From positions 248,001-312,000 of the IMG/VR virus record IMGVR_UViG_3300028558_000791: a stretch of DNA of 64,000 bases. The stretch is one strand, 5' to 3'. Within the stretch, counting starts at the first letter, position 1. Each line of letters starts with the position of its first letter. The notes beneath the pieces were generated by a model that did not search any database, was not told the DNA's origin, and saw only the letters and a list, made by a program, of their open reading frames with translations. Of the stretch, positions 7,346 to 61,118 are shown one piece after another. Both the position numbers and the translations under genes were made by a program.

Positions 7346-8092
7346 ATGTCTCTAAAACTATTACAACCAGGCTGCCAGCCTTTGGGCCAATTTGATGGTG
7401 TCGATTCCGAAGTTCTCACCTTCAAGGGTGGAGAAGTTTGCACCTTTGCTTATGTAACTACTTCCGGTCAACCAGGCGTAACTACTCCAGGTCTTGATCA
7501 AAGCGCATACGATGGATTTGATGGCTACATCAATGCATCTGGTGTTTTGAAGCGTCCAGCTATCACTAAGACTTTTGCTGCAACCAGCATGACTAAGCGT
7601 CCATTGATGTTAGCAGACGATGGTATCACTGGATACGGTACTCTATTCGGCTCTGTAGTCGGTGGAACTATCGGTCAACAGGTCAACGGACCAAACACCT
7701 TCACTGGTGCAATCCTTGGACCACACACTGCAACCGGCTCTGGCAAGATGACTTGCTGGGATAAGCCAGGTCTCTACGCTGTCTCCCTAGACGCAGTAGA
7801 TACTACCGCTTCTACTGGTTTGCAACCAACCAACACTTCTCTAGTCGGTGGCGATCCACTTGGATTCACTATCGCTGGATTGCTAACCCCATCCGCAACT
7901 GGTTCTCCAGTAACTAACGGTGGTGTTGCAGTTAACGTTGGTCACTTAGTAGAGTTCAACACCAACGGTTCTTTGGTAACCACTCCAAACTACTTAGTTG
8001 CAGCTTTGAACAGCCCATCTGGTAACGTCTCTTCGCAACAGCCAAGAGTCTTCCAGTTCGCAACCATCTACTTTGCACCACAAAGTAACTAA
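7346..8092 (+). CDS. Capsid decoration/cement protein
   Basis: 248 aa, Gly/Thr-rich beta-type composition, immediately upstream of the MCP, SD AGGA. Confidence 0.6.
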   Translation: MSLKLLQPGCQPLGQFDGVDSEVLTFKGGEVCTFAYVTTSGQPGVTTPGLDQSAYDGFDGYINASGVLKRPAITKTFAATSMTKRPLMLADDGITGYGTLFGSVVGGTIGQQVNGPNTFTGAILGPHTATGSGKMTCWDKPGLYAVSLDAVDTTASTGLQPTNTSLVGGDPLGFTIAGLLTPSATGSPVTNGGVAVNVGHLVEFNTNGSLVTTPNYLVAALNSPSGNVSSQQPRVFQFATIYFAPQSN

Positions 8093-8116
8093 TTAGTTGA
8101 ATAAACTTCTCTGGCC

Positions 8117-8165
8117 GGGAGGCTGGGGGAGACGGAAGTCTCGAAGTCCGCAAGGATTCCTCCCA
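8117..8165 (+). promoter_or_regulatory. Structured RNA element (three-way junction with two GNRA hairpins) in the MCP 5' leader
   Basis: GGGAGG 8117-8122 pairs with CCTCCC 8159-8164, enclosing GAGAC-GGAA-GTCTC and AGTCC-GCAA-GGATT. It is a GC-rich island in AT-rich DNA. Confidence 0.65.
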
Positions 8166-8222: not shown

Positions 8223-9236
8223 ATGAATATGTTTAGCGGTAAAGGCGAAATTAACGCCTCATCTTTCAAGGATGCATTGCAAGCCTTGGTAAAGTACGCA
8301 GCCATTCTCGAAGAGAATGTCCCTGCAAACCAAGGACTAGCTGGTCAACCAGCATTGAGCGATGAGAAGCGTGATGAATTGATCACTCGCGCCATCATGA
8401 CTCAAGACGGAAAGATCGCCCTAGCCCAGGCCATGGCGAACCCAATCCGTAGAAACCTCGATTACCATGGTATCGCTCGTCGTGCCTTGGTTGTTGATCC
8501 ACTACCACAGGGAGCAATTCCAACTTACGATAGAGATATCGACGTTGCCGCTGTTGTTATCTCTTCCAACGGTACTGGTCCAGAGTCTCGTGTCTTCGGT
8601 GACCGTGTCGTTGTTCCAGAATTCGAAATTTACGCGAACCCAACTGTTCGTATCGCTGAAGTCAAGCGTCGTAGATTTAACGTAATTGACCGTGCTGTTC
8701 AAAAGGCACGTCAAGAAATCATGGCTCAGGAAGATGCAAACATCTTCGCAGCCCTTGATGCAGCAGCTTCAGTTGAGAACACTCTCACTGACATCGCAGA
8801 CGCTGGTCTTCTAAAGAGAGACCTCGTTGAAATCAAGCAGCAAATTGATCGTTGGGACTTAGTAACTACTAAGTATTTTATGAACATTAACGAGTTCACT
8901 GACATCCTCAAGTGGGGTTCTGGTGGTGGACAAGGTGTTGGTGGTGGTGACTTCGACCCAGTAACTATGAGAGAAGTTCTACAAACCGGTCTTTACGCCC
9001 ACATCTGGGGTACTGACATCATGGTAAGCAAGATCGTTCCACCTGGAACCATCTACGGTGTAGCTGACCCAGAGTTCGTTGGTGTAATGCCAATCCGTCA
9101 GGACATCGAAGTTCTACCAGCGGACGAGCCAAAGCAATTGAAGCTCGGTTGGGTAGTCTCTGAGATCATCGGTATCGCTATCGTCAACCCACGTGGTTGC
9201 GCAGCCGGCCGTAAGTCTGTTGTAATCGGCGCCTAA
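8223..9236 (+). CDS. Major capsid protein (HK97 fold)
   Basis: 337 aa, SD AGGAG, followed by a terminator. HK97-like features: RRALVVDPLPQG, E-loop region GPESRV, backbone helix IDRAVQKARQEIMAQEDANIF, P-domain end GWVVSEIIGIAIVNP. Confidence 0.85.
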   Translation: MNMFSGKGEINASSFKDALQALVKYAAILEENVPANQGLAGQPALSDEKRDELITRAIMTQDGKIALAQAMANPIRRNLDYHGIARRALVVDPLPQGAIPTYDRDIDVAAVVISSNGTGPESRVFGDRVVVPEFEIYANPTVRIAEVKRRRFNVIDRAVQKARQEIMAQEDANIFAALDAAASVENTLTDIADAGLLKRDLVEIKQQIDRWDLVTTKYFMNINEFTDILKWGSGGGQGVGGGDFDPVTMREVLQTGLYAHIWGTDIMVSKIVPPGTIYGVADPEFVGVMPIRQDIEVLPADEPKQLKLGWVVSEIIGIAIVNPRGCAAGRKSVVIGA

Positions 9237-11094: not shown

Positions 11095-11101
11095 GTCATC
11101 C

Positions 11102-11902: not shown

Positions 11903-12628
11903 ATGAGTAGCGAGAGCGAATTTGCGTATTCTCTAAAGTATAATACACATTTCATCGTAAAAAATATTACGGGTACACCCGCCTCTATGCTTCATTTAGC
12001 TGGAGATAATCCGGCCATTCCCCCACCTTATAGAACAGCACCATTCCATGTGTCTTCTAAGAAGACTATCAATATTTTTCACTATCCAATTAATGCTGGC
12101 GAGCAAAGAGATTTGCTACAGATACCAGGAGTGCAAGAGGCTGATATTCGAGCTTCTTTACTCAAGGGAGAAATAAGGCACAAATTTTTGTGTGGGGATA
12201 TTGAATTAGTTTCCAGCAACATTGATCTGCTACAATTTAGCGACAAACAACGTGCTTGGTTACAAAGCTTTGGCTTTACCGAAGGTGTAACAGTTGGATA
12301 TGATGAATTAGACGGATATGTACAATCTCTAATCCAAATAGGTGGTTCTGGAGTATCTTATCTATGGAGAGAGAAGATCCCTCTTATTGGGTTGAGAAAT
12401 GGTACAAATCGTATGTTTTTCACACCAGACAAATTTATCAATGGACTCTATTTTGGTAACGTTTTTTATCTGACAGTCGAACATAACGGTAAAGAACTAT
12501 ATGAAAACATAGATTTTACTATTGGTGAATCTAGCGGCCCTGGCTCCGGCTATGATACCATCAACATAACTTCTTTAACGCCAAATGCCCATAGTTTATT
12601 ATTTGCAACTTATGCTATTAAAGTCTAA
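11903..12628 (+). CDS. Putative virion structural protein
   Basis: 241 aa. C-terminal GLRNGTNRMF...NGKELYENIDFTI is a beta module typical of phage structural proteins. N-domain resembles 29616..30050. Confidence 0.5.
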   Translation: MSSESEFAYSLKYNTHFIVKNITGTPASMLHLAGDNPAIPPPYRTAPFHVSSKKTINIFHYPINAGEQRDLLQIPGVQEADIRASLLKGEIRHKFLCGDIELVSSNIDLLQFSDKQRAWLQSFGFTEGVTVGYDELDGYVQSLIQIGGSGVSYLWREKIPLIGLRNGTNRMFFTPDKFINGLYFGNVFYLTVEHNGKELYENIDFTIGESSGPGSGYDTINITSLTPNAHSLLFATYAIKV

Positions 12629-12677: not shown

Positions 12678-14192
12678 ATGCCATTTCCAAGACAAAACGC
12701 ACTAGATCAAGCCTTAGATATCGCTGGCTCATTAACACAAACTCAGACTATGATTGAGGTTGAGGAGCCAAGTGGTTTCGGCGCTCCAATTACTGGTCAA
12801 ACTGGCGCGACTGCCAGCATCACCACATTTTCCGCAGGTGTTTCGACACTGACCGGTTTAACTGGTATGACTGCCCAGTCCATTGGACGATTCCTAACAG
12901 TTACTGGAGCGGCCAGCGGTGGTAACAACGGCACTTTCTTGATCGTTGCTTTTAACTCAGCTACCTCTGTAGATATTTCGAATGCAACCGGTGTCGCACC
13001 AGATGCAAATAACGGAGCTATCTCTTGGACTGAAAGAGGCCCTTACACTCTAGAAGATGATGTAAACTACATCCGTACTGATCGTAAGTTAATCAAGGGC
13101 ACTACTAACTGGTACGACCCTATTCCTACTTATGCTAGACCAACTGCAACCAACGTCCAGGTTCCAGCCAATCTAACTAATATTGCCAGCAAGACTACTG
13201 ACGCCGTTGCCTACAACGTTAACCGCGCTTACTTCGGTGAAGCAGTCACCTCTGGTAATACTTTCGTTACAGTAACTTCTGTTGGTAACTTGAAGCATGC
13301 TGATGCGATTAACCTAACTGGTGTTCCAGTATTTGATACTGGTCCATTTGCCGGAGATTATACTTCTTGTTACGTTCATATCGTAGACGGATACTCTGAC
13401 GGATATGCTGGTGGTGAATTGAGCGTATTGCATGGACCATATGTTGGAGAAAGAATTTTCGGTGTTACTTTCAATGGTGCCTCGACTTCTCCAGACTCAG
13501 TAGAAGTTCATTTCTATTCAGCTCCGTACAATGTTAACTATGCGGTATCTCCTCATCCATATACTTGGGAATTTGGTCAGCCAAATACCATCAACTTACT
13601 ATATGGTTACAATGAGAGACTTGATCAACTAGATCAGAATGCATTTAGAACTGTTCCAGCTCTTGGTATTCTAACTGACGCAGCATTAGCTGGTAGCATC
13701 AATAACATTCTACAAAGCATTGGTACTAGCCCAACTGATACAAATATCGGCAGCTTACTAACCAATACTACGACTTTCTTCCCGTTCTTTTATCTAAATG
13801 CTACGCCAACAGTAATAGATGCTTTGAATATTCTAAACCAACAATTTGGTAATGATACATTCACTGGACCTTATTTGGTTAACGGAGCAACTGTTACATT
13901 CAATTTGCAACAGCTATCCAATGCAATTGCTGGAGCCAATGTAACTCGTACTATTGAACGTTTGGGAGCAGATTTACCTGCAAACACACCACATACACTA
14001 CCTGGTGCAATTTCCTATACTCTAGACGGCACCAATAACGGATTACATCTGTGGGTATATACTCGCGGAGTGTTGAGAGATCCAGGGCCTGTTGCAACCG
14101 GCAATGATTATTCTGAAACTAGTACGACATCAGTTACGTTCTATGCTAAGCAGAAAAAAGACGATCACATCAACTATTTCGTTAGAACTTAA
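12678..14192 (+). CDS. Virion structural/fibre protein
   Basis: 504 aa, Thr/Gly/Asn-rich, SD GAGGA, C-terminal VYTRGVLR..NDYSE module. Confidence 0.55.
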   Translation: MPFPRQNALDQALDIAGSLTQTQTMIEVEEPSGFGAPITGQTGATASITTFSAGVSTLTGLTGMTAQSIGRFLTVTGAASGGNNGTFLIVAFNSATSVDISNATGVAPDANNGAISWTERGPYTLEDDVNYIRTDRKLIKGTTNWYDPIPTYARPTATNVQVPANLTNIASKTTDAVAYNVNRAYFGEAVTSGNTFVTVTSVGNLKHADAINLTGVPVFDTGPFAGDYTSCYVHIVDGYSDGYAGGELSVLHGPYVGERIFGVTFNGASTSPDSVEVHFYSAPYNVNYAVSPHPYTWEFGQPNTINLLYGYNERLDQLDQNAFRTVPALGILTDAALAGSINNILQSIGTSPTDTNIGSLLTNTTTFFPFFYLNATPTVIDALNILNQQFGNDTFTGPYLVNGATVTFNLQQLSNAIAGANVTRTIERLGADLPANTPHTLPGAISYTLDGTNNGLHLWVYTRGVLRDPGPVATGNDYSETSTTSVTFYAKQKKDDHINYFVRT

Positions 14193-14867: not shown

Positions 14868-15998
14868 ATGCCAAATCGTATTGGGAAAGAAGATGTAAAA
14901 GACTCAGATTTTGTTGATGCGTATGAGCTTATTTCCGATGGATATAGCGCTAATAGCATCTATCTAGATACTTTTGCAGTCTCTACAACTTTTGCTACCG
15001 GAACCGTTGTCGTCACTTTAGCTAGTGATGGCGGCGGCATTTTGTATTCCATAGACCATCCCGTTCAGCAGAATGATATCGTTTACATTTACGGAACGAC
15101 TGGTGGCGGAGGTGATGGTCACTATACAGTTAATACTGTTTTAACTGATACGTCATTTACAGTTAATGAGCCTATTGGAAACTCTACCGATGGATATGTT
15201 CAGTTTAGATATCCCGCTGGTGCCAAGCTAGTCGGCTATGATAATAGCAATAGCTGTGTTATCACGCATGATACAGTTCAAGGCGCTCTTGACGATTTGG
15301 ATGCTGCCATTTGTGGTGGAACTGGTTCGCTTAATCCTACTGAGCATGCTGAGCTACGCCAGCTAATTCATTTAGCTGATGGTGTAGGCGGTCCATACGA
15401 AGGGTTTCCTACTGGAGCCTATCGTGTGATTAGTCCATTTGGAGCTTTATTTCCAACTAACATTACATGGTATGCTAGTAATGCTATGACGGCTAAAATT
15501 GTGCAAAAGGATATTGCATATACTTCTTTTGGACAACCGCAAACAATTCAATGGAAAGTTTATGATACCAATGGAATTACAATATTAGCTACTGTTACCG
15601 ATACTATTTCTTATTCAGGAATTTTCGAAACAAGTAGATTAAGATCAATTGTAAATGCTCCAATGGGCGGAGTTCTAACTATTGAAACACATAAGACTGT
15701 CCGACAGCTCATTCATTTGGCTGACGGTGTGGGTGGTCCATTTGAAGATTTCCCAACAGGCGCTTATCGTGTTACTATTGGAACTGTATTTCCAACTGAT
15801 ATCATCTGGTATTCAGACATTACAATGACAGCTAAAATAGTTGAAAAGCACATTGTTTACAATGGTATTAAAGAGCCCGTTTCTATTACTTGGAAGGTAT
15901 ATGATACAGATGGTGTAACCGTATTGGCGACTGTGGCAGATAGCATCTCTTACACAAATAACATCTTTGAGACCTCTCGATTAAGGAGTGTTAGCTAA
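14868..15998 (+). CDS. Virion structural protein with duplicated C-terminal domain
   Basis: Two ~105-aa copies of RQLIHLADGVGGP...FETSRLRS. Confidence 0.6.
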   Translation: MPNRIGKEDVKDSDFVDAYELISDGYSANSIYLDTFAVSTTFATGTVVVTLASDGGGILYSIDHPVQQNDIVYIYGTTGGGGDGHYTVNTVLTDTSFTVNEPIGNSTDGYVQFRYPAGAKLVGYDNSNSCVITHDTVQGALDDLDAAICGGTGSLNPTEHAELRQLIHLADGVGGPYEGFPTGAYRVISPFGALFPTNITWYASNAMTAKIVQKDIAYTSFGQPQTIQWKVYDTNGITILATVTDTISYSGIFETSRLRSIVNAPMGGVLTIETHKTVRQLIHLADGVGGPFEDFPTGAYRVTIGTVFPTDIIWYSDITMTAKIVEKHIVYNGIKEPVSITWKVYDTDGVTVLATVADSISYTNNIFETSRLRSVS

Positions 15999-17701
15999 TG
16001 TCAGGTGAATCCCCAGCTTCAGTTTTATATAGTTCAGACGGTACAGAACTTACCGTTGTAAGTGGAAGTGCAATTCCATCGGGTACTAGAGCTATATTAG
16101 TCTCTGGTCAAACGCCGACTGGTAATGCTGCATATGTGCCAGTCTCCGCCAACGGAGCCTTTGGTGTAACTCAAATGAGCAATAGTTTTGTGGTCAAATC
16201 AAACGCCACAATTACTACTACTGGCTCCCAATTAGTAACCGGAAACTTTTTTGGTACACAACAAATTACGTTAGTAGTCAATATTACTAACGCTCCAACC
16301 GGTACTACCCCAACTATTACCTTTACCATTCAAGAAGTTGATCCTGGTAACGGCACTACAGTTTATGGTCAGACGGCATCAACTACTGCCCTTAATACTA
16401 CCGGTGTTACAACAATTAGCATCTCTGGTACATCCAGCTCTTCTGTTCAAGTTTCTTGGGTTGTAACTGGAACTACACCAAGCTTTACTGGTGTGTATGC
16501 TACTGTTACTACTAAGAGCACTCCAGCTACCCAACCAATTTCTGGTACTATCACTGCAAGCAGCGCTTCTACCGGAACTGATGGTGGTGCCTCTTTAGCA
16601 TCCGATACTCAAGTTGGTGGTATCGTAGCAACTACCGCGCCAACTTTGACTTCTGGTAACTTGAACGCACTATCCTTGACTACTAAGGGTTTGCTCCGTA
16701 TCGATGGCTCTTATCCAACTGGTGCGGCTCCTGGAACTGATGCAGTTTATACTGGTGGTTTAGTTGGAACGACAGCTCCCGCTGTTACCAACGGTAACTT
16801 AAGTGCCTTTTCTCTAACTACCGCAGCTCTACTCCGTATTGATGGTGTTTACCCAACTGGTGCCGCTCCTGGTGCTGATGCTGCTTTGGTTGCTGGTTCA
16901 GTAACCACCGCTGCTCCTACCTATACTACCGGCCAGATGAGCAGCTTGTCTCTCACTACTGTTGGTGGTTTGCGTATCGATGCAGCATACCCAACTGGTA
17001 CCGCTACCGCTTCTGCACCTGATGCAGTTGAATCTGGCGGTATCGTTACAACTGCTGCACCAACCTATACTACTGGCCAGCTAAATGCTCTATCTTTAAC
17101 CACTGTTGGTGGTTTGCGTGTTGATGGTGTTTACCCAACTGGAACTGCTACCGGTTCTGCTGCAAATGCTGTAGTAAATGGCGCATATGTTACAACTGCC
17201 GCACCTACTTATACTACCGCTCAGGTTAACGCCCTATCTCTAACTACTGCTGGCTTACTACGTGTTGATGGTGTCTATCCTATTAACGCAACCACACCAA
17301 CTACTGATGTAACCTTTGTTGGTGGTGCTGTTACAACTAATGCACCAACTTATACAACTGGTCAGTTAAGTGCTCTATCTTTGGATACTAGCGGTAACTT
17401 ACGTGTCAGCGCAATCACTAATAAAGCTAGCACTTCTGCAGTAACTACTGTAGCAGGATCCACTTCAAATACTTCCATCTTGGCTTCTAATGCAAATAGA
17501 ATCTTTGCTTCTATCTACAATGGCACTAACAAGAACATGTATATTTTGTGTAATTCTGGTACTGCAAGCACTTCTAACTTCTCGATCTTGTTAATTACAG
17601 GTTCTTACTGGGAAGTTCCAAACGACTATACTGGAGCAATTAATGCTGTTTGGGCAAGCGGTGTTTCTGGAAATGCGCTTGTAACTGAGTATACTCCATA
17701 A
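15998..17701 (+). CDS. Repeat-rich fibre protein
   Basis: 567 aa, Thr/Ala/Gly/Ser-rich, six VTTAAPTYTTGQLxALSLTTxGxLR repeats. Confidence 0.7.
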   Translation: MSGESPASVLYSSDGTELTVVSGSAIPSGTRAILVSGQTPTGNAAYVPVSANGAFGVTQMSNSFVVKSNATITTTGSQLVTGNFFGTQQITLVVNITNAPTGTTPTITFTIQEVDPGNGTTVYGQTASTTALNTTGVTTISISGTSSSSVQVSWVVTGTTPSFTGVYATVTTKSTPATQPISGTITASSASTGTDGGASLASDTQVGGIVATTAPTLTSGNLNALSLTTKGLLRIDGSYPTGAAPGTDAVYTGGLVGTTAPAVTNGNLSAFSLTTAALLRIDGVYPTGAAPGADAALVAGSVTTAAPTYTTGQMSSLSLTTVGGLRIDAAYPTGTATASAPDAVESGGIVTTAAPTYTTGQLNALSLTTVGGLRVDGVYPTGTATGSAANAVVNGAYVTTAAPTYTTAQVNALSLTTAGLLRVDGVYPINATTPTTDVTFVGGAVTTNAPTYTTGQLSALSLDTSGNLRVSAITNKASTSAVTTVAGSTSNTSILASNANRIFASIYNGTNKNMYILCNSGTASTSNFSILLITGSYWEVPNDYTGAINAVWASGVSGNALVTEYTP

Positions 17702-17748
17702 TAGTGCTTGATATATTCACTAGAGAATTTGAAAGATAAGGTATCAAT

Positions 17749-20700
17749 ATGGGCTCAGAGTCACCAAATGTAATTATGTATGATGTGAATGGCGAGGTGA
17801 TGGCCGTATCTAATGGTACGGCTATTCCTGCTGGCACATCAGCATTATTACTCGCCGGTTCTGACGGAACTAATGCCCGTTATTTCTCAGTGGATTCTTC
17901 TGGCCGTCCTGTCTATGTAGGAGCTGGTACTGCCGGATCACCTTCTGGTGGAGTTCTATCTATCCAAGGTGTTTCTGGTGGTGTCGCTATGCCTATCAGC
18001 ATAACAACCGGCACTGTTGACACTACCGCTTCTGGCGCTTTAGGCGCATTAAATGCTACGGTCTCAATTGCTTTGGCTGGAACTTATGGTGTTGGTATGC
18101 AGCTTGCTGCTGGCACTTTAATTGGAACTATCGTTCCTGAAGTTTCTTTTGATGGCGGTACTACTTGGGTAGCTACATTCTTTGATGATCCAACATTGGG
18201 CAATAAAACAACTAATATTGTTTTTGCGTCTAGTAATACTGCCACTGCTCGTAGTCTTTACGTACCTGCTGGCGCCTCTAATGCACGTGTTAGAGTATCT
18301 GCTTTCACATCTGGTACAGCTAGCTGTTCTGTTCGTTCTACTCTTATTGTAGAGCCTCCTGTTTTATTCTCTGGACAAGCTACTGCTGCATTACCTCCAA
18401 CTATGATTCAAATTGGTGCGGCCGTTGCTACTTCTGCCCCAACTTATACTACTGGAACTTTAAACGCTTTATCATTAACTACGGCAGGCGCATTACGTAT
18501 TGATGGTTCTGGTGTTACTCAGCCGGTTTCTGGTACTGTTGCAGCTACGCAATCGGGTACCTGGACTGTTCAGCCGGGCAACACAGCTAATACTACTCCA
18601 TGGCTAACCACAATTAATCAAGGCGGCAATTCTGCTGCTGTAAAAGCAGCATCTACATCTGCAAATGCAACAGATCCTGCCCTTGTAGTTGCTGTTAGCC
18701 CTAATGGTACTGTAAAAGTTGTTGGAGCTACTGCTAGCGGTACCGCCGTAGTTGGTAATCCCGTTTTAATTGGTGGCCAAGATGGAACTAATGCTCGTAC
18801 TTTCTTAACAGATGCTACTGGAAGATTAATTGTTGATGGATCAAGCGTTACTCAACCAATAAGCGGAACAGTTACTGTTGGAAACTTACTAGTAGTTACC
18901 GGAAATGCAACAGATAATACTTCTAACGTTATAACCAAATTACCTGTTATGGCTGCCGTTGCAGCAACATCTGCTCCGACATGGACTAACGGAAATATGG
19001 TTCCGCTATCAGTAGATACTGCTGGTAATTTAAGAACCAATGCTAGTAACCCATCTGTTTCTGCTACTGGCTCAGCGCCACCAGCATCGGCAACATATAT
19101 TGGCGGTTCAGTAACTACTGCTGCCCCAACATATACTACTGGTCAGATGAGTGCTTTGTCACTTACAACTACCGGCGCATTAAGAATTGATGGTTCAAGC
19201 GTAACTCAACCAGTCTCTGGAACTGTAACTGCTAACGCAGGTACCGGCAATTTTAACGTTGTTGGCCCGACTGCTGTTGGAGGCACTCCAGCTACTAACC
19301 CAGTTTTATTTGCTGGTACTGACGGTTCTAATACTGTTAGAATTCTTCGTGTCACCACAGTTGGTGGTATGACTTTAGCCGCAGATCAAACTGTTGGAAG
19401 TGGTGTTCCCGCAACAGCCGTACAGGTTGGAGCTTCTGACGGAACTAATATTCAGTCTCTTAGAGTTACTACAGGAACTCCAACTGGTACTGAAAACGCT
19501 TTGATTGTTAAAAATGTTCCATCTGGAACTCAAACTATTTCCGGAACGGTAACTTCTAATCAAGGAACTGCCAACTCACTAGCTAATGCGTGGTCTACTA
19601 AGATCACAGATGCAACTAACGGTCCTGTTGCGGTTAAACCTGCCTCTACGGCTGCCGTTGCAACTGACCCTGCTCTTGTAGTTGCTATTTCTCCGAACAA
19701 CCCAATTACAACTACAAATGCAGACGTTACCGCTACTGGCGCTTTGGGAGCACTTAACGCAGCAGTTACAGTTACTATTCCAGGTAAATCTTCGGTCGGA
19801 TTTCAACTAGCGGCCGGAACTTTAATTGGAACAATTGTTGCCGAAGTTTCTATAGATGGTGGTACTACCTGGTCTTCTACATATTTTGATCAGACAACTG
19901 GAAATAAAGTTTCTAGTATCGTATTTGCCTCTTCAAACGGAGCTTTAACAAGCACCATTGTTGGAGTTGGCGGTTCTGGACAAGTACGTGTAAGAGTATC
20001 TGCTTATACTTCTGGTACGGCTAATATTACAGTTAGAGCTTCTAACATTTCTGATCCAAGTGTATTATCAGGAGGAACTGCTGGTTCAACACTGCCACCC
20101 GTTATGAATCAAATGGGCGCATCAGTAACTACTGCCGCTCCAACATATACTACCGGAACTCTTAATGCCCTATCGCTAAATACCGCAGGCGCTCTAAGAA
20201 TTGATGGTTCAGGTACCACTCAACCAATTTCTGGAACAGTTACTGTTTCTGGCTTGTCGCTACCATTTAATATCGTTGGTAATGCTGCTAATGGTGCGGC
20301 CACTTCTGGCGCTCCAGTTCTCGTGGCTGGTTATGATGGCACAAATGTTAGAACATTCCTAACTGATAGTTCTGGACGACAAGTAACTACACAGCTAGAT
20401 ACCAGTGTTACTGGAACTCTTACTGCGCTTAATACTACTGTAACAATTACTTCAAGCGGAAAATACACAATCGGTGGAACTATTACAGGAACTTGGGTAG
20501 GTACAATTACTGCTGAAGGAACTGTTGATGGAACTAACTGGTTTACCGTTCGTACGGCCAATAAATCTACTAACGACATCATTCAGAACTATACCGCTAA
20601 TGACTCCTTTGAATTTTACTCAGTTGCAGGATGCATAAGCCTTCGTCTAAGAATGTCCGCATATACTTCTGGTACTGCGACCGTTACATTGGCTGGAACT

Positions 20701-23686: not shown

Positions 23687-23693
23687 GGTACCT

Positions 23694-24995: not shown

Positions 24996-24996
24996 T

Positions 24997-27097: not shown

Positions 27098-27106
27098 GGG
27101 GCGATA

Positions 27107-42780: not shown

Positions 42781-42794
42781 TTTGACATTACCAT

Positions 42795-47301: not shown

Positions 47302-47327
47302 TCCTTTCTAATAACATAGAATTACTT

Positions 47328-47358
47328 AAAGCGCTTGGCTAAACAGTCAGGCGCTTTT
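47328..47358 (+). terminator. Intrinsic terminator after the tube gene
   Basis: AAAGCGCTTGGCT-AAAC-AGTCAGGCGCTTTT. Confidence 0.85.
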
Positions 47359-47390
47359 CATTTGTTATATATTTGGTTAGGAGTTGTGCA

Positions 47391-48068: not shown

Positions 48069-48424
48069 TAAATGAACCGGAACACCGCTTTCATTGGCAT
48101 TTAATGAAGATGAAAAAGACTATTGATGTCGGTGATCCTGAAATTACGGAAATGGACCCGGTTCGTAAAATGTGGCTTTTTGAACAATGGCTAGGAGATC
48201 ACAGAGATGATGCTGAACTAGCTAAAAATCACGCATATCTATTAGGTTCCTTTTGGAATGCTGAGGCTGTTCAACAAATGCTTAATGATAATGTTCATGA
48301 ATCTACTGATGAAGATATGGAAGAATCCATGCGAATGGTCACTGACGGTTTGCCTGGAGTATTTGATATGCCCGAAGAGAAGCCTCTGCCTAAAAGAAAA
48401 CGTAGAGCAATTTTAAAGGAATGA
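48065..48424 (+). CDS. Tail assembly chaperone frameshift extension (T-like)
   Basis: The -1 frame reads IINEPEHRFHWHL then MKMKK... (track ORF 48104). No SD before 48104. Confidence 0.75.
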   Translation: MINEPEHRFHWHLMKMKKTIDVGDPEITEMDPVRKMWLFEQWLGDHRDDAELAKNHAYLLGSFWNAEAVQQMLNDNVHESTDEDMEESMRMVTDGLPGVFDMPEEKPLPKRKRRAILKE

Positions 48425-48427
48425 TAA

Positions 48428-50785
48428 ATGGCCGCCGGTGACCCAACAGATCCAACAGCAACAGACCCAACAGTAGTAGCCCCTAACACCGATCAGTTAG
48501 AGGCTTGGAGGTCATATAACGAATATACTGCACAGTCTGCATCTAATGTAGATAGTCTCAATAATTTGACTGCTATTTCGAATAGAGCTTTTGATACTTT
48601 GAATACGGGTCTCGAAAAATTGAATATGTCATTCAATTCTTTGGACAACATGACATCTCAGCAAGCAGCCGGATTTGGCGCTTTGAGTACAACTATTTTA
48701 GGAAGCAAAGAAGCTTTTACACAATTAGCGAATGTAGACACTACTAAATTGTTGACTTTTACTGGCCAAGTAAAACAGATGCAGGAAATTTTTAATCAGA
48801 GTCCAACTTATAAGTTATTGAAGAAGGAACTTGATGATGTTACTTCTTCAGCGGCTAAAATGACGGATAAAATTGCTGCCCAAGGTTTGGTTAAAGCTGC
48901 GACTGAAAAGTTCAATGAACTGACTAAAGTAGTATCTGATTCTGCCATGGCCATGTTGACTAGTGCAGATAACTCACTCAGATTACAAAATGCAATGTAT
49001 CAACTAACTATGCAGGCTGGTGATTCCAAAGATTTGTTTAATGGTTTTGGCGGAGTATTTGGAGGAATGAGTCAGAATTTCTCAAATGTTGGTGATGTTA
49101 TGGCCCAGTTTAATAAAGTACTAGAGCATGGGTCTGCAGCATTAGGCGGTAATCAAGAATTAGCTGCCAAATATATGGCCGAGATTAATAAGATGCCTGG
49201 TGGATTCAAAGCTCTAATCGGCCCTTTAACAATAGCAGGTACAGAAACAGATGTTTTGGCAGCAAGCATTCAATATGCAACTGGCGCTGGACGCAAGCAA
49301 GAAGAAGTATTCTCAGATATGTCTAAAGCAATGGCAGAATATAGTATTTCTGGTGGTGATGCTTTAAGATTCTCATCTAGAATATCAGAAGTCGCTAATA
49401 GCGTAGGCGGTCAGTTCAAAGACGTGCAATCAGCACTTCATGATGTTATTGGTGAATTCAAAATGTATGTTAACAGCGGTGCTGATGCTTCTAAGATGAC
49501 TCAAGGTATGTCCGATTCTATGAGAGACTATGTATCTCAACTAACTTCTGTTGGTGTGCCAGCTCAAAATGCCATTGAAATGTTCAAGAACTATTCTAAC
49601 CAACTTAAGAGTATGACTATCGGACAACAGTCTTTCGTATCTACTATGAGTGGTGGTCCTGGTGGACTAAGAGGTGCCCTACAGTTTCAAGATGATTTAG
49701 CTAAGGGTAACTTTGAAAAAATTCAAAAGCAAGTCGAACAGACGCTCAAAAGAACTACTGGACCTCTTATTACAAGAGAAGAAGGCATGAAGAGTGAACA
49801 AGGCGCTGCACAGTATGTTCGCCAGCTACAAGTATTGCAGCAAGGACCACTTGGTGGTATGGCTAAGACTCAGGGTGAAGCTGATTCTTTGATCAGAGCG
49901 ATGAAAGAGGGTAAAGTTTTCGAACCTGAAAAGGGAGATACTCCAGAAAAGACTTTGCAAGATACTATGATCAAGGGGCAAGAATGGCAGAAGGGTTCTT
50001 ATACTGAACTTACTAAAATCAATACTAACTTACAAGCCATGATGCTTAGGGGCGGCACTGCCAATTTAGCAACTACTCAGGGGATGTTTACTGCTGCTGG
50101 TGGTCGTTCTATTCCAGGAGGAAGTGGTACGGGAGCGGGAATTTCTCCAGGCTCACAAGAAAATCTATCGGCTTCACAAAGAGCTATAAATATCGCCGCT
50201 CCAAACTCGGAAGTATTCAAACAGACCGCAGATGCAGTTAAAAATCTTCCTAAAACTTTTCAAGACGCCTGGAAGAGCTTCAAAGAAGCTATTAGTGGTG
50301 GCAACAAAGAGTCTATTCAGCAAGCTAATGATAAGCTATTAGCAGCCGTTAAAGATGCAAAAGCTACTGGTAATATGACAGATAAACAAAAGGGTTCTCT
50401 AGATGTTTTGCAAAACAACCTATCTGTTACTAAACAAGATAGGGGAGATGCGGCGCCTACTACTGCTGGTCCAACAAATGCTGCAGATAGAGTTACTACC
50501 CCAAAGATGACTTTTGCACCAATAGAAAATTATGCAAGACCAGGACAAAGAATACCAGCCCCACGTCAGCCGGCTACCGCGGCTGCTGGTGCAAATAATA
50601 CGGCACCAGGACAGCAAGGCGGTCTTCAAGGTCAAGGTGCTCCTGGACAACAAGCAGTACCAGTTATGTTAGCGCCTGGTTCTGCAATTACCGTCAACTT
50701 AACCGGTGTTTGTCCACATTGTGGAAAAGACATCAATCACACGCAAGCAAACCGTGGTGTTTCACAGGGAACATCCGCTCCTTAA
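48428..50785 (+). CDS. Tape measure protein
   Basis: 785 aa, Ala/Gln/Met-rich helical composition, directly after the chaperone pair. Confidence 0.75.
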   Translation: MAAGDPTDPTATDPTVVAPNTDQLEAWRSYNEYTAQSASNVDSLNNLTAISNRAFDTLNTGLEKLNMSFNSLDNMTSQQAAGFGALSTTILGSKEAFTQLANVDTTKLLTFTGQVKQMQEIFNQSPTYKLLKKELDDVTSSAAKMTDKIAAQGLVKAATEKFNELTKVVSDSAMAMLTSADNSLRLQNAMYQLTMQAGDSKDLFNGFGGVFGGMSQNFSNVGDVMAQFNKVLEHGSAALGGNQELAAKYMAEINKMPGGFKALIGPLTIAGTETDVLAASIQYATGAGRKQEEVFSDMSKAMAEYSISGGDALRFSSRISEVANSVGGQFKDVQSALHDVIGEFKMYVNSGADASKMTQGMSDSMRDYVSQLTSVGVPAQNAIEMFKNYSNQLKSMTIGQQSFVSTMSGGPGGLRGALQFQDDLAKGNFEKIQKQVEQTLKRTTGPLITREEGMKSEQGAAQYVRQLQVLQQGPLGGMAKTQGEADSLIRAMKEGKVFEPEKGDTPEKTLQDTMIKGQEWQKGSYTELTKINTNLQAMMLRGGTANLATTQGMFTAAGGRSIPGGSGTGAGISPGSQENLSASQRAINIAAPNSEVFKQTADAVKNLPKTFQDAWKSFKEAISGGNKESIQQANDKLLAAVKDAKATGNMTDKQKGSLDVLQNNLSVTKQDRGDAAPTTAGPTNAADRVTTPKMTFAPIENYARPGQRIPAPRQPATAAAGANNTAPGQQGGLQGQGAPGQQAVPVMLAPGSAITVNLTGVCPHCGKDINHTQANRGVSQGTSAP

Positions 50786-58909: not shown

Positions 58910-58928
58910 AGGGATATATAAATAGACA

Positions 58929-61118
58929 ATGTGCCCTTGCAGCCCTAACGATGTTTCATTTCCGTCACCTACTGGTCCAAGTGGTCCTTCCATTCCTGGA
59001 TTTGGGCTTCCTTCTGTGTTGCCTACGCCAACTATTCCATATCCAAGTGGTTTTCCAGAAGACTTATTAAACATTATGAATACGCTGCAAATGCTCATTC
59101 CACCTGGAGCATTGAAGCCACAACTAAATCCTAATTTTGGAAAAGATATTTATGATGGAATCATGAAGCTGCTAGATCAGTTCATGCCATTCTTGATGTT
59201 GTATAAGTTCTTCTTACCAATTCTAAATCTTATTATCTGCATTATCGAGGTGCTCTGTGCTCTGATGAATCCATTTGCCCTCATCTCGGCCCTCAACAGA
59301 TTATTTACCCAGTGTATTCCAGAGTTCCTTAACCTATTTCCGATATTTGCCTTAATCTTAATGATTATTTCATTGCTACTATTATTACTAGCTTTGATTC
59401 TATACATCATTGATCAAATTTTGAAGTTCATTAAAGCGATTCTCAGAAACATCAATGCTTTAGTTAAAGCTTTCAATTCAGCCAACGCCGCCAGCGTTCT
59501 TACTATTGCTAAGAAGTTGGGCGCCCTTCTATGTATCTTTCAAAACTTGTTTGTTCTATTGTCTCTATTCACAATCATCATTCAAGTAATCAAAGATATC
59601 CTAAGCCTAATCTTCTCTATCCCACCATGCGAAGGTGGGGGACCTGGTAGTACTGATGGTTGCTGTGCAGCGACTTACTGCCCAACTATCGTTCAAGGAA
59701 ACTTCACCAATGAGACAGGTACATTCCAGTATTTACCAGAAGCCGGATACAAAACTACCATAGCTCTCGGCTCTAATTTCTTAACGTCTGATTTGCGTCA
59801 GGAAAGCTGGCAGTTGTATGATGCTAGCCAGAGTCAGCAACAAGCATTCCAAAACATTGTTAATGCGTTCGATGTTAATAGCAGTGTTGTTCCAAAACCA
59901 ATTTTCTTCCCAACAGATGCTAAGTATGATGCTACTACACCTCCAGGCCAGGCTGCATATACTATGGATTTGAAGATGTTCTATAATCCATCACAATGGA
60001 ATAGGCCGGGCACTCCAAGAAACGTTGTGTTTAAAGATTGTATCGTACTAAAAGTTCCAACTCAAGACCTATCCACTTTCAATAATGGAACGGCGACTGT
60101 ATTTACTGGCGTACTATCAATTGCTGGTGGACTTGGTTATGAAGCTGACGGCTCAACCAAGCTATTTGGATTTAAGGATAATGCTGATGGTACCCAATCT
60201 CAAACTACCGATCAGGCCACACTAAATAACTTTATCCATAAACCGGCACAATTTTCTGCCGATCCAGTGCTACAACCAACTGATGGTTACACTTTCTCTA
60301 ACATGGAATATACATTTAAACCAAACCTACCTGTATTACTACAGAAGAACTTGGTTAATATGAAGTGTATGCCAGCTATTGCTCTAAACTCTGGCTTCTT
60401 GAATAACGTTATGTTCTCTCAAGTAACATTCCAAACTGCCGCCCTATCTGATCAAGTACATGGTAGGAATGGTAGGGTCTTCCCTGATACGGCACAAGCT
60501 CAAGAATGTTTAACAACTGCTATCTCTAATTTGCGCTCTAATATGACAGTACCTGGTGTAGCTGAATTTCAAGCCACCTGTATGCTATGTTTAGATAAGC
60601 TAACTCTTGATACTAAAGATGCTATTTTTGGACTTATTGGAGTTGGATTTAATCCTTGTGAAAGTACACTAAGTATCTCTCCAACTACTCAATTTACCAC
60701 TCAACCTATTACTGTAACAGTTAACCTAAACGAAAGCAATGGACTACCAATTACTAACGGTATCCCAAGTGATGTTGCAGCTAATGTCGCTAAGAACATT
60801 AAAGCAACTCCCACTATAGGAACCATCACTCCATTTATTTATGATGGATACCAGGCATTCACGGCTAATTTATTTAGCCCAGTTCCTGGTGAAGGCCAAA
60901 TCATCGTATCGTTCCAGAATCAGGTTCTGTGTACTAACACATTAGGATCTGTTGATGGAACCGTAGCGCCACTTCACGCACTTCAGACCTTAGATTACAA
61001 TTTCGTATTCTCTCCAAGTGCACCAGACAACATCCCACTCACTGGCGATGGCGATACTACTGGCACTCAGCCACGTCGTGATGCTGGTGATACGCTTAGA
61101 GATAAGGATAGCGGCTAA
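58929..61118 (+). CDS. Baseplate-region protein with a long hydrophobic, Cys-rich N-domain
   Basis: 729 aa. MCPCSP start; IFALILMIISLLLLLLALILYII and other hydrophobic helices. Confidence 0.55.
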   Translation: MCPCSPNDVSFPSPTGPSGPSIPGFGLPSVLPTPTIPYPSGFPEDLLNIMNTLQMLIPPGALKPQLNPNFGKDIYDGIMKLLDQFMPFLMLYKFFLPILNLIICIIEVLCALMNPFALISALNRLFTQCIPEFLNLFPIFALILMIISLLLLLLALILYIIDQILKFIKAILRNINALVKAFNSANAASVLTIAKKLGALLCIFQNLFVLLSLFTIIIQVIKDILSLIFSIPPCEGGGPGSTDGCCAATYCPTIVQGNFTNETGTFQYLPEAGYKTTIALGSNFLTSDLRQESWQLYDASQSQQQAFQNIVNAFDVNSSVVPKPIFFPTDAKYDATTPPGQAAYTMDLKMFYNPSQWNRPGTPRNVVFKDCIVLKVPTQDLSTFNNGTATVFTGVLSIAGGLGYEADGSTKLFGFKDNADGTQSQTTDQATLNNFIHKPAQFSADPVLQPTDGYTFSNMEYTFKPNLPVLLQKNLVNMKCMPAIALNSGFLNNVMFSQVTFQTAALSDQVHGRNGRVFPDTAQAQECLTTAISNLRSNMTVPGVAEFQATCMLCLDKLTLDTKDAIFGLIGVGFNPCESTLSISPTTQFTTQPITVTVNLNESNGLPITNGIPSDVAANVAKNIKATPTIGTITPFIYDGYQAFTANLFSPVPGEGQIIVSFQNQVLCTNTLGSVDGTVAPLHALQTLDYNFVFSPSAPDNIPLTGDGDTTGTQPRRDAGDTLRDKDSG

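What the first reader, a model, noticed from the sequence alone, without database searches (positions are those of the whole stretch)
7346..61118. DGY tripeptide enriched in, and restricted to, outer virion proteins: candidate modification sequon or docking motif
Seen (manual count): 23 DGY in 11 largely unrelated proteins: 7346 (1), 11903 (1), 12678 (2), 14868 (2), 23694 (2), 27107 (2), 30099 (1), 32229 (3), 36602 (6), sheath (1), 58929 (2). Several are tandem: [29 protein letters not shown] found none in the internal head proteins, MCP, tape measure, chaperones or any enzyme. A rough composition estimate (D~6%, G~8%, Y~3.5%, ~20,000 aa) predicts only 3-4. Inference: a convergently acquired short linear motif on surface loops. 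It could be a Tyr-modification sequon (e.g. glycosylation by a phage enzyme encoded elsewhere) or a common binding site for a decorating or fibre-anchoring protein, which would amount to a virion-wide surface-marking system.
Basis: partly seen in the sequence, partly recalled or inferred. Interest (0 to 1): 0.8.

Follow-up and report, generated by a model that had tools for sequence, protein, structure and literature searches.

The report
DGY tripeptide marks outer virion proteins
In a clade of uncultured soil megaphages, the exact tripeptide Asp-Gly-Tyr has arisen independently at about 150 sites in the probably exposed virion proteins and is avoided elsewhere, which is how an enzyme's or binding partner's recognition tag behaves, although no such phage tag is known and its chemistry is untested.

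Summary
The window has exactly 23 DGY in 11 ORFs. Composition predicts 3.0-3.2, conditioning on DG predicts 4.8, and a Markov estimate predicts 5.6-7.8. DGY is the most over-represented of all tripeptides. The signal lies in the protein frame, not in the DNA.

The window is part of a 498-kb soil megaphage distantly related to Bacillus phage G. In about 190 related IMG/VR loci, protein families split into two groups. Eighteen families carry 649 DGY against 35.5 expected. These include the candidate decoration protein, the outer part of the sheath, fibres and a protein with FN3 domains. All other families carry 9 against 26.6 expected, including the MCP, tube, tape measure, baseplate core, terminase and enzymes.

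DGY occupies 150 distinct alignment sites, against 7-28 for its own permutations. It replaces unrelated tripeptides inside conserved flanks, clusters in tandem and has no flanking consensus. When lost, Tyr is not replaced by Phe. Phage G and its sister clade show no enrichment (12 against 12.0).

The best reading is a clade-specific short linear motif, under selection, on exposed virion proteins, recognised by a separate enzyme or binding protein. A modification sequon is the most likely form. A conserved glycosyltransferase cassette next to the fibre genes is only circumstantial support. No modification or partner is shown.

The parts
7346..8092 (+). 248-aa protein immediately upstream of the MCP; candidate capsid decoration or cement protein. 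DGY at aa 59 (nt 7520-7528), preceded by DGF.
   Evidence: The DGY is kept in 61 of 62 distinct orthologs while overall identity falls to 54%. The family has 81 DGY against 2.6 expected. The gene sits where phage G has its decoration gene gp26, but no sequence homology to gp26 was found. The best fold matches are capsid auxiliary proteins but are not significant.
11903..12628 (+). 241-aa protein of unknown role; DGY at aa 137 (nt 12311-12319).
   Evidence: The family has 18 DGY against 1.7 expected.
12678..14192 (+). 504-aa protein of unknown role; tandem DGYSDGY at aa 237 and 241 (nt 13386-13406).
   Evidence: Orthologs carry 1-9 DGY each at 18 different sites. Alignment A3 shows TAS, NGT, VAF and NTF replaced by DGY inside conserved flanks.
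14868..15998 (+). 376-aa protein; DGY at aa 24 and 108 (nt 14937-14945 and 15189-15197).
   Evidence: The family has 15 DGY against 0.6 expected.
15998..23016 (+). Two paralogous repeat-rich proteins (567 and 1755 aa). Neither has DGY in this window, but their families carry DGY in relatives.
   Evidence: Families have 32 against 1.0 and 7 against 0.4 expected. Paralogy and the PTY repeat module are shown.
23670..24995 (+). 441-aa protein; DGY at aa 188 and 258 (nt 24231-24239 and 24441-24449).
   Evidence: Only 2 distinct orthologs were retrieved, with 4 DGY against 0.2 expected.
26756..27472 (+). Two small proteins (113 and 121 aa). The second has DGYRADGY at aa 23 and 28 (nt 27173-27196). 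The first has DGY only in relatives.
   Evidence: Families have 49 against 1.2 and 7 against 0.3 expected. They lie just upstream of a collagen-like fibre gene at 27472-28185.
30099..30998 (+). 299-aa protein; DGY at aa 111 (nt 30429-30437).
   Evidence: The site is kept in 35 of 38 orthologs.
32229..33809 (+). 526-aa protein with two N-terminal FN3 domains and C-terminal Cys and HxH motifs; DGY at aa 20, 183 and 224 (nt 32286, 32775, 32898).
   Evidence: D224-G225-Y226 is invariant in 42 sequences. The family has 163 DGY against 6.6 expected. In the AF2 model the sites lie in a hairpin loop, a loop and a low-pLDDT segment.
33850..35823 (+). 657-aa virion structural protein. No DGY here, but the family carries DGY in relatives.
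   Evidence: Weak PHROG 692 match. The family has 9 DGY against 0.4 expected.
36602..41125 (+). 1507-aa protein, the richest carrier; DGY at aa 275, 344, 454, 618, 622 and 824.
   Evidence: There are 55 distinct DGY sites in 55 orthologs, 32 of them singletons, and 260 DGY against 18.2 expected.
41138..43622 (+). 425-aa protein resembling a fibre assembly protein, a 125-aa ORF, and a 275-aa protein upstream of the sheath. The 425-aa and 275-aa families carry DGY in relatives. The window's 275-aa copy has DEF at the conserved site.
   Evidence: 52 of 54 sequences in the alignment (53 orthologs plus the window copy) have DGY where the window has DEF.
43761..46589 (+). Tail sheath, 942 aa; DGY at aa 419 (nt 45015-45023).
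   Evidence: PHROG tail sheath match on aa 751-938. All 21 DGY alignment columns (20 merged sites) of the family map to aa 59-574 and none to the conserved C-terminal core. The family has 90 DGY against 6.5 expected.
58929..61118 (+). 729-aa baseplate-region protein; DGY at aa 452 and 639 (nt 60282 and 60843).
   Evidence: The family has 75 DGY against 2.3 expected, while its neighbours 51750, 56813 and 61118 have 1 against 9.5, 1 against 4.2 and 1 against 2.1.
8223..9236 (+). Major capsid protein, a DGY-free landmark.
   Evidence: PHROG 2522, E 3e-81. 0 DGY in 55 orthologs against 2.4 expected.
46618..50785 (+). Tube candidate, two chaperone candidates and the tape measure, all DGY-free landmarks.
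   Evidence: Position after the sheath and a weak tape-measure match. Families have 0, 0, 0 and 3 DGY against 1.4, 0.6, 0.3 and 1.8 expected.

Best explanation
DGY is a three-residue short linear motif that needs no particular sequence context. It is under positive selection on the probably externally exposed proteins of the virion in one clade of soil megaphages, and under negative selection in that clade's other proteins. The best account of this pattern is that some separate factor recognises DGY itself.

The most likely form is an enzyme that covalently modifies the Tyr, so that DGY acts as a sequon, much as NxS/T does on enveloped viruses. That would give the capsid decoration layer, the outside of the sheath, the baseplate periphery and the fibres a shared surface chemistry. 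A conserved cassette directly downstream of the fibre genes is the leading, but unproven, candidate writer. It holds one GT4-like and two GT2 glycosyltransferases and an NDP-sugar epimerase/dehydratase.

Shown here: the enrichment, its specificity for order and residue, the split between protein families, repeated independent origin, tandem clustering, depletion elsewhere, and restriction to the clade.

Inferred: surface exposure, recognition by a separate factor, Tyr as the acceptor, and glycosylation as the chemistry.
For: 1. The window has 23 DGY against 3-8 expected under every null model, and DGY ranks first of all tripeptides.
2. The signal is at the protein level: 23 of 24 DNA matches are in frame, one is antisense, and codons vary.
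3. It holds across the whole clade at every divergence. Each of 64 loci has 4-24 DGY against 0.4-1.7 expected, with w36602 orthologs at 29-74% identity.
4. Families split into two groups. With representatives below 70% identity, 18 families have 649 against 35.5 expected and the rest have 9 against 26.6. In the same genome, 6,265 aa around the terminase, primase and DnaJ have 1 against 1.06, while two downstream fibres have 5 and 7 against 0.49 and 0.26.
5. The exact residues and order matter. In positive families 54% of GY are preceded by D and 39% of DG are followed by Y. In negative families the figures are 2% and 1%. YGD, GDY, DYG, DGF, NGY and EGY are not enriched.
6. Origins are independent. 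DGY occupies 150 distinct sites, against 7-28 for its permutations and a median of 20 over 3104 tripeptides, with the next highest at 48. Unrelated tripeptides are replaced by DGY between conserved flanks.
7. There is no flanking consensus. 80 of 653 neighbouring pairs are 3-5 residues apart.
8. Where a conserved site is lost, Tyr goes to Q, I, S, H or T, and to F in only 3 of 40 cases. D goes to E only twice.
9. Sheath sites avoid the conserved core. One carrier has FN3 domains. Modelled sites lie in loops.
10. Outgroups show no enrichment: phage G has 2 against 1.9 and 2 against 1.9, LR745208 has 0 against 1.5, and 21 phage-G-like loci have 12 against 12.0.
11. The GT cassette is syntenic in 15 clade loci, and the 263-aa GT2 has no homolog in phage G, LR745208 or Tunturi_5.
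Against: - No modification, enzyme-substrate link or binding partner is shown.
- The GT cassette contains an Fpg/Nei-like DNA glycosylase gene, and the GT2 resembles generic GT-A enzymes such as SpsA, TarS, TarP and GalT1. It could equally glycosylate DNA or host wall polymers.
- From my own knowledge, Tyr O-glycosylation by cytoplasmic bacterial or phage enzymes is rare, and no DGY sequon is known. Literature searches found nothing.
- Exposure of the carrier proteins is mostly inferred. Most have no assigned virion position, and no accessibility could be computed.
- The depletion in negative families is inflated by post-hoc classification and by shared ancestry.
- In the known mycobacteriophage case the glycosylated proteins are the capsid and tail tube subunits (as summarised in PMC12619734). 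Here exactly those two proteins lack DGY.
Confidence: 0.4

Rival explanations
1. DGY is a non-covalent docking or adhesion motif. Exposed DGY turns would bind either a common phage-encoded accessory protein (a decoration, fibre anchor or assembly factor) or an external ligand such as a host cell-wall glycan, a metal ion or a mineral surface. Many weak sites together would give avidity.
For: The same selection signatures support this as support the sequon reading: exact tripeptide, turnover of sites, split between families, and avoidance elsewhere. Tandem and clustered copies suit avidity. The motif is richest in fibres and in variable insertions. From general knowledge, Asp plus Tyr is a common sugar- and metal-contacting pair, and tripeptide docking motifs such as RGD on animal-virus capsids are a precedent.
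Against: No partner has been identified. A generic sticky patch would be expected to tolerate DGF, DGW, NGY or permuted orders, and these are not enriched. The invariant single sites in the candidate decoration protein and in the protein next to the sheath look more like specific recognition than bulk adhesion.
Confidence: 0.28
2. DGY is a purely structural micro-motif. Asp-Gly forms a type I' beta-turn and is followed by a Tyr whose hydroxyl caps or packs the hairpin. This clade's beta-rich outer domains would favour it for folding or stability, with no outside reader.
For: DG is a classic two-residue hairpin turn (general knowledge). V or I at -1 and V or G at +1 are mildly enriched. Many sites alternate between DGY and DGT, DGS or DGL, so the DG turn often exists before Tyr arrives. 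Modelled sites lie at loop-strand junctions.
Against: Structural modules of phage G, 21 phage-G-like loci and LR745208, which are equally rich in beta structure, show no enrichment. Tunturi_5 shows only 5 against 1.9. The conservative substitutions Y to F and D to N or E are rare. Back-to-back DGYDGY and arrays such as DGYYADGYYADGY cannot all be hairpin tips. Depletion in the other beta-rich proteins of the same phages, such as the 1687-aa baseplate protein with 1 against 9.5, is unexplained.
Confidence: 0.17
3. DGY supplies Tyr for covalent cross-linking or other redox chemistry on the virion surface after assembly, for example dityrosine or DOPA-type bonds. This would harden the particle or attach it to surfaces. 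Other enzymatic marks such as nucleotidylation, sulfation or phosphorylation of Tyr are variants of this idea.
For: The motif needs Tyr rather than Phe. It clusters. It is restricted to the outside of the particle. Nucleotidyltransferase-fold genes lie in and next to the structural module.
Against: No oxidase, peroxidase, sulfotransferase or kinase was seen in the roughly 123 kb examined. The nucleotidyltransferases look like CCA-adding or RNA-repair enzymes and sit with PTP-SAK and RNA-ligase-like genes.
Confidence: 0.1
4. The enrichment is chance, compositional or mutational bias, a shared repeat module, or a DNA-level signal.
For: Sequences in the relatives are not independent of one another.
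Against: DGY ranks first of 8000 tripeptides with P 7e-13 (composition) to 3e-8 (first-order Markov), and 7e-6 under the per-protein Markov model. It is in frame only. There is no shared flank and no paralogy. The count of independent sites is 3 times the next tripeptide. Outgroups sit exactly at expectation.
Confidence: 0.02

Closest known systems
N-glycosylation sequon NxS/T on viral envelope proteins, and the cytoplasmic bacterial N-glycosyltransferases of the HMW1C/NGT type that use the same sequon (from my own knowledge)
   Same: A three-residue tag with little sequence context. Positions turn over while density is kept. It is confined to exposed proteins, and off-target sites are plausibly selected against.
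   Different: The residues differ (Asp-Gly-Tyr, with no variable position). The presumed acceptor would be Tyr. No glycan has been shown. The carrier is a non-enveloped tailed phage.
Bacteroidota general O-glycosylation motif D-(S/T)-(A/I/L/V/M/T) (from my own knowledge)
   Same: A lineage-wide three-residue motif beginning with Asp that marks many unrelated surface or periplasmic proteins for one glycosylation system.
   Different: The acceptor there is Ser or Thr, the third position is degenerate, and the reaction is periplasmic and host-encoded. Here the tripeptide is exact, ends in Tyr, and sits on phage proteins assembled in the cytoplasm.
Mycobacteriophage virion glycosylation (Freeman et al. 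2023, PMC10527164, as summarised in PMC12619734)
   Same: Phage-encoded glycosyltransferases modify virion proteins.
   Different: There the glycans sit at the C-termini of the capsid and tail tube subunits, and that summary reports no tripeptide sequon. Here the MCP and tube candidate are exactly the proteins without DGY, and no glycan has been shown.
Tyrosine O-glycosylation of S-layer proteins in Paenibacillus and Thermoanaerobacter (PMC2943079 appears; details are from my own knowledge)
   Same: Tyr serves as a glycan acceptor on a bacterial surface array in Bacillota, the phylum of phage G's host.
   Different: That reaction is extracellular and uses a lipid-linked donor and an oligosaccharyltransferase. 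I know of no DGY sequon for it. The host of this clade is unknown.
Tripeptide receptor-docking motifs on animal-virus capsids, such as RGD, KGD and DGE (from my own knowledge)
   Same: Exact tripeptides on exposed capsid loops, acquired convergently.
   Different: Those occur at one or a few sites on one protein and bind integrins. Here there are dozens of sites across about 18 protein families of a bacterial virus.
Type I' beta-turn Asp-Gly or Asn-Gly followed by an aromatic residue
   Same: The local conformation is probably similar, and many sites sit on a DG turn that was already there.
   Different: A general turn preference would not be specific to one clade, to Tyr and to one residue order, and would not be depleted in neighbouring proteins.

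Membership tests
Protein modification sequon (glycosylation or other) | A short motif over-represented in substrate proteins relative to composition and to non-substrates | tested here: met
   649 against 35.5 expected in positive families, and 9 against 26.6 in the others. The window has 23 against 3-8.
Protein modification sequon (glycosylation or other) | The acceptor residue is covalently modified | not testable with these tools
   This needs mass spectrometry of virions or of co-expressed proteins. No cultured member of the clade was found.
Protein modification sequon (glycosylation or other) | The matching enzyme is encoded and co-occurs with the motif | tested here: inconclusive
   A cassette of three GTs and an NDP-sugar epimerase is syntenic after the fibre genes in 15 clade loci, and the 263-aa GT2 has no homolog in the outgroups. 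The acceptor is unknown, and an Fpg-like gene in the cassette hints at DNA as the target.
Protein modification sequon (glycosylation or other) | Sites are accessible on the folded or assembled substrate | tested here: inconclusive
   Sheath sites lie only outside the conserved core. Four modelled sites lie in loops or low-pLDDT segments. No accessibility was computed.
Short linear motif (docking type) | Convergent, repeated origin with little flanking conservation | tested here: met
   150 sites, 67 of them singletons, against 7-28 for the permutations. There is no flank consensus. In-place replacements are seen.
Short linear motif (docking type) | An identified binding partner | not tested
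   No candidate reader protein was identified. This would need interaction assays or complex prediction.
Structural beta-turn motif | Conservative substitutions (Y to F or W, D to N or E) are tolerated at conserved sites | tested here: not met
   Of 40 single replacements of Tyr, 3 are Phe. D goes to E twice and to N five times.
Structural beta-turn motif | Present at similar levels in homologous or analogous structural modules of related phages | tested here: not met
   Phage G has 2 against 1.9 (head) and 2 against 1.9 (tail). LR745208 has 0 against 1.5. The phage-G-like clade has 12 against 12.0.
DNA-level motif (restriction, packaging or Chi-like) | Enrichment independent of reading frame or present on both strands | tested here: not met
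   23 of 24 GAYGGNTAY matches are in frame 0 and one is antisense.
Repeat module or paralogous domain | The occurrences share an extended sequence context | tested here: not met
   No flank consensus. No BLAST paralogy among the carriers. By contrast, PTY and GGG are explained by repeats.

The most novel reading that the evidence does not exclude
A clade of about 0.5-Mb soil phages uses an exact Asp-Gly-Tyr code to label every outward-facing virion component for one dedicated writer or reader system, for example a cytoplasmic Tyr-directed glycosyltransferase. That would be a virion-wide surface-marking system with its own sequon, and selection would remove the sequon from all other phage proteins. 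It would be the first sequon-defined, proteome-wide modification system described for a tailed phage, and a new Tyr-specific enzyme specificity.
Probability: 0.3. Interest if true: 0.9.

Novelty: new variant of a known kind. Interest (0 to 1): 0.8.

Why it matters
If DGY is a sequon or docking tag, it reveals that giant phages can give their whole outer surface a common chemistry through a three-residue code. That has consequences for adsorption, persistence in soil and evasion of host recognition.

It would also give a ready-made, minimal, portable tag together with an enzyme or binder of new specificity.

The pattern makes the question testable. About 150 natural sites and their natural loss variants (DGT, DGS, DEF) are listed, small carriers such as the 121-aa protein at 27107 are available, and a defined candidate gene cassette is in hand.

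Even if the chemistry turns out to be different, the statistical signature is a useful template for finding hidden recognition motifs in uncultured viruses. That signature is strong enrichment in one set of families, depletion in the rest, and none in the sister clade.

Tried and rejected
- A DNA motif was rejected by the frame and strand test.
- A general DG-turn or GY bias was rejected. The expectation is 4.8 conditioned on DG and 4.1 conditioned on GY. Outside DGY itself, DG and GY are at about expectation in positive families.
- A shared domain or repeat was rejected. The next-ranked tripeptides, GGG and PTY, are repeats.
- A general property of jumbo-myovirus structural proteins was rejected using phage G, LR745208, Tunturi_5 and 21 phage-G-like loci.
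- Homology of the 7346 protein to phage G decoration protein gp26 was not detected. The fold search gave only non-significant matches to capsid accessory proteins.
- PHROGs and Pfam gave almost no annotation for the DGY carriers.
- The ESM Atlas lead to DUF4183 for the 12678 protein was not confirmed by Pfam on 12 family members. Atlas searches of the two unknown cassette proteins gave nothing.
- The PTP-like gene upstream is of the PTP-SAK RNA-repair type and sits with CCA-adding and RNA-ligase-like genes. It was not pursued as a Tyr-directed enzyme.
- Literature searches for a DGY motif, DGY with phage, and tyrosine glycosylation with bacteriophage found nothing relevant.
- No cultured close relative exists in the phage collection for the 36602 or 32229 genes.
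- A diversity-generating retroelement was considered as the source of the variation but not formally tested. The GGA and GGT Gly codons and the scattered sites argue against mutagenesis directed at adenines.

Full report
**What the window is**

The window is the structural module of a very large uncultured myovirus. PHROGs identifies these genes:
- a major capsid protein at 8223-9236 (E 3e-81)
- a tail sheath at 43761-46589
- a weak tape-measure match at 48428-50785
- a gp25-like baseplate protein at 62990-63457
- a collagen-like fibre at 27472-28185
- an HNH endonuclease at 28200-28517
- a CCA-adding enzyme at 9859-11103 on the minus strand
- an RNA-ligase-like gene at 30995-31612 on the minus strand

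Most other ORFs have no family. The MCP is 54% identical to that of Bacillus phage G. The window itself comes from a 498,445-bp JGI contig, 3300028558 Ga0265326_10000001. IMG/VR holds many relatives on contigs of up to 480 kb, with MCP identity of 90-100%. The phage collection has no close DNA or protein relative for the DGY-rich genes 36602 and 32229.

**Checking the observation**

Greedy ORF calling gives 58 ORFs and 20,977 aa.

Expected counts under the different null models are:

| Null model | Expected | Note |
|---|---|---|
| Global composition | 3.2 | P 7e-13 |
| Within-protein shuffles (5000) | 3.0 | sd 1.7, max 11 |
| Conditioned on the 140 DG dipeptides | 4.8 +/- 2.2 | |
| Conditioned on GY | 4.1 | |
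| First-order Markov | 5.6 | P 3e-8 |
| Per-protein Markov | 7.8 | P 7e-6 |

DGY ranks first of all tripeptides under both the zero-order and the Markov models, so choosing it after the fact does not explain the result. DGF (5 against 4.4) and NGY (1) are not enriched.

The runner-up tripeptides are trivial. GGG comes from glycine runs in the 41138 protein. PTY comes from a repeated 48-aa module in the paralogs 15998 and 17749. DGY has no shared context, and BLAST finds no similarity among the 11 DGY proteins.

At the DNA level, GAYGGNTAY occurs 24 times on the coding strand, 23 of them in frame, and once antisense. Asp, Gly and Tyr codons are mixed. The signal is therefore in the protein.

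**The pattern in relatives**

I fetched about 190 related loci around the MCP, the 36602 gene, the 58929 gene and a downstream glycosyltransferase. I assigned their ORFs to window families.

Every locus around 36602 carries 4-24 DGY against 0.4-1.7 expected. This holds whether its 36602 ortholog is 74% or 29% identical to the window's.

Families fall into two classes. With representatives below 70% identity, 18 families have 649 DGY against 35.5 expected in 193,745 aa. All the others have 9 against 26.6 in 216,570 aa.

The positive class includes:
- the protein just upstream of the MCP
- the sheath
- the protein just upstream of the sheath
- the small proteins next to the collagen-like fibre
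- the 526-aa protein with FN3 domains
- the 1507-aa protein
- the 729-aa baseplate-region protein
- three large downstream fibre-like proteins of 1364, 2384 and 1341 aa

The negative class includes:
- the MCP
- six head-module proteins upstream of it
- the tube and chaperone candidates and the tape measure
- the 1687-, 698- and 620-aa baseplate-region proteins
- the gp25-like protein
- the CCA enzyme, the HNH endonuclease and other enzymes

Six families with no DGY in the window are positive in relatives. In one of them the window copy reads DEF where 52 of the 54 aligned sequences read DGY.

I walked along the source contig on both sides. The 6,265 aa upstream include DnaJ, primase, a sigma factor, GIY-YIG, the large terminase and a likely portal. 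They hold 1 DGY against 1.06 expected. The fibres downstream hold 5 and 7 against 0.49 and 0.26. The enzymes beyond them hold none.

The under-representation in the negative class is about three-fold. It is suggestive but biased, because I classified families using the DGY counts themselves and because the sequences share ancestry.

**Specificity and evolutionary behaviour**

In positive families 54% of all GY dipeptides are preceded by Asp, whose frequency is 5.7%. Likewise 39% of DG are followed by Tyr, whose frequency is 3.9%. In negative families the figures are 2% and 1%. The permutations YGD, GDY and DYG are at expectation.

To control for shared ancestry I counted distinct alignment sites rather than occurrences. 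DGY occupies 150 sites, 67 of them in a single sequence. Its five permutations occupy 7-28. The median over 3104 tripeptides of comparable expectation is 20, and the next highest is 48.

The 12-sequence alignment of the 12678 family shows the process directly. TAS, NGT, VAF, NTF and SGQ become DGY between flanks that stay conserved. One ortholog has an insertion built of modules that each begin with DGY.

A few sites are nearly fixed:
- 61 of 62 in the 7346 family
- invariant D224-G225-Y226 in the 32229 family
- 52 of 54 upstream of the sheath
- 45 of 50 in the sheath

There is no extended consensus. V or I at -1 and G or V at +1 are mildly enriched, and K, R, E and P are mildly depleted nearby. 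Neighbouring copies cluster: 80 of 653 adjacent pairs are 3-5 residues apart, including DGYDGY and DGYGDGY.

Where a conserved site has lost only its Tyr, the replacement is Q, I, S, H or T. It is Phe in only 3 of 40 cases. Asp goes to Glu only twice. A residue kept only for its aromatic packing would be expected to change to Phe far more often.

**Where the sites lie**

All 21 DGY alignment columns of the sheath family (20 merged sites) map to residues 59-574 of the window protein. None maps to the conserved C-terminal third, which matches the sheath profiles and forms the inner layer in known sheaths.

AF2 models were built for two carriers. In the 7346 protein (pLDDT 71), DGY ends a low-confidence loop just before a strand. 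In the 32229 protein (pLDDT 75), the three DGY lie in a hairpin loop of the first of two FN3 domains, in another loop, and in a low-confidence segment.

This agrees with exposure but does not prove it. The 7346 protein occupies the position of phage G's decoration gene gp26. It shows no sequence similarity to gp26, and its fold matches to capsid accessory proteins are not significant. Phage G gp26 is described as a capsid decoration protein seen by proteomics and cryoEM (PMC12484599).

**Controls outside the clade**

| Outgroup | DGY observed | Expected |
|---|---|---|
| Phage G, head region | 2 | 1.9 |
| Phage G, tail module | 2 | 1.9 |
| Uncultured 485-kb phage LR745208 | 0 | 1.5 |
| Tunturiibacter phage Tunturi_5 | 5 | 1.9 |
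| 21 phage-G-like IMG/VR loci | 12 | 12.0 |

The trait is therefore a derived property of the window's clade. It is not a general feature of beta-rich virion proteins.

**Candidate machinery**

Directly after the last fibre gene, the source genome encodes the following in order:
- a 233-aa unknown protein
- a GT4-like glycosyltransferase (378 aa)
- a GT2 (263 aa)
- a 123-aa ORF
- an Fpg/Nei-like glycosylase
- a 330-aa unknown protein
- a second GT2 (279 aa)
- a DUF1653 protein
- an NDP-sugar epimerase/dehydratase

After these come a TubZ-like tubulin, a GH25 lysin and helicases. The order is conserved in 15 clade loci. The 263-aa GT2 has no homolog in phage G, LR745208 or Tunturi_5 at E 1e-3.

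The GT2 resembles generic GT-A enzymes such as SpsA, TarS, TarP and GalT1. The embedded DNA glycosylase homolog suggests DNA as an alternative target. Phage GTs are also known to act on DNA and on host polymers (PMC12619734).

**Interpretation**

Chance, composition, a DNA signal, repeats and general turn propensity are excluded. What remains is a tripeptide that is selected for in one set of proteins, selected against in the rest, exact in residues and order, and independent of context. It is gained and lost as a unit, and it is confined to one clade. That is how a recognition tag behaves.

I rate a covalent-modification sequon as the most likely form, at about 0.4. Glycosylation of Tyr is the leading candidate chemistry only because of the adjacent cassette. 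The other readings are:
- a non-covalent docking or adhesion motif, about 0.28
- a clade-specific structural turn motif, about 0.17
- other Tyr chemistry such as cross-linking, about 0.1
- an artefact, about 0.02

The broader claim is that this is a real, selected short linear motif on the outer virion proteins of this clade. I hold that claim at about 0.9.

**Novelty**

Searches of the paper library for DGY with phage, for a DGY motif, and for tyrosine glycosylation with bacteriophage found nothing relevant. Virion glycosylation and sequons are known kinds of system. A Tyr-ending tripeptide marking about 18 virion protein families of a tailed phage would be a new variant, and possibly more.

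Noticed in passing
window 24988-25857 and 25866-26726 (+): Two tandem paralogous patatin-like phospholipase genes (Pfam E 1e-28 and 8e-30; 48% identical to each other) sit inside the fibre and structural module. They may be virion-associated lipases used for entry. Neither contains DGY.
   Followed up: partly
window 9859-11103 (-) and 30995-31612 (-); L082:2660-3430; L197:628-1401: An RNA-repair-like gene set is scattered through the structural region. It comprises a full-length CCA-adding enzyme on the opposite strand next to the MCP, an RNA-ligase-like gene, a PTP-SAK phosphatase about 7 kb upstream of the window, and a second PolyA_pol-type nucleotidyltransferase next to the terminase.
   Followed up: partly
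L200:21272-27154 and L201:5169-13417 (source contig, 5-15 kb beyond the window end): A cassette lies directly after the fibre genes and is conserved across the clade. It holds a GT4-like enzyme, two GT2 enzymes, an Fpg/Nei-like glycosylase, an NDP-sugar epimerase/dehydratase and two unknown proteins. A TubZ/PhuZ-like tubulin and a GH25 lysin follow.
   Followed up: partly
window 32229-33809 (+), aa 320-345 and 475-526: The 526-aa FN3 protein has invariant Cys pairs (C326, C328, C340, C343) and C-terminal HxH motifs (H478/H480, H504/H506, H519/H521). These resemble the metal-binding HxH motifs of T4-type fibre tips (resemblance from memory).
   Followed up: no
window 15998-17701 and 17749-23016 (+): Two paralogous proteins are built from a module of about 48 aa containing VTTAAPTYTTGQ..ALSL. 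This module accounts for the PTY enrichment. Neither protein has DGY in this genome, although orthologs do.
   Followed up: partly
window 42795-43622 (+), aa 134-136: The window's copy reads DEF where 52 of the 54 aligned sequences (53 orthologs plus the window copy) read DGY. This is a natural two-residue loss variant of an otherwise fixed site.
   Followed up: yes
window 43761-46589 aa 486-585, and the 1364-aa protein starting at about window 63467 (L154:14539-18630) aa 849-946: The sheath's variable region and a downstream baseplate or fibre protein share a domain of about 100 aa at 35% identity. DGY sites fall in this domain in both proteins.
   Followed up: no
window 23018-23686 (+), 27472-28185 (+), 28200-28517 (+), 41138-42415 (+): A LamG/ConA-like lectin-fold protein, a collagen-like fibre, an HNH endonuclease inside the structural module, and a protein with long glycine runs that matches a fibre-assembly PHROG.
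   Followed up: no
L196 (Tunturiibacter phage Tunturi_5), two large tail fibre genes: There is a mild DGY excess (5 against 1.9 expected), all in fibre or tail proteins. It is too weak to call but worth checking in other soil jumbo phages.
   Followed up: no
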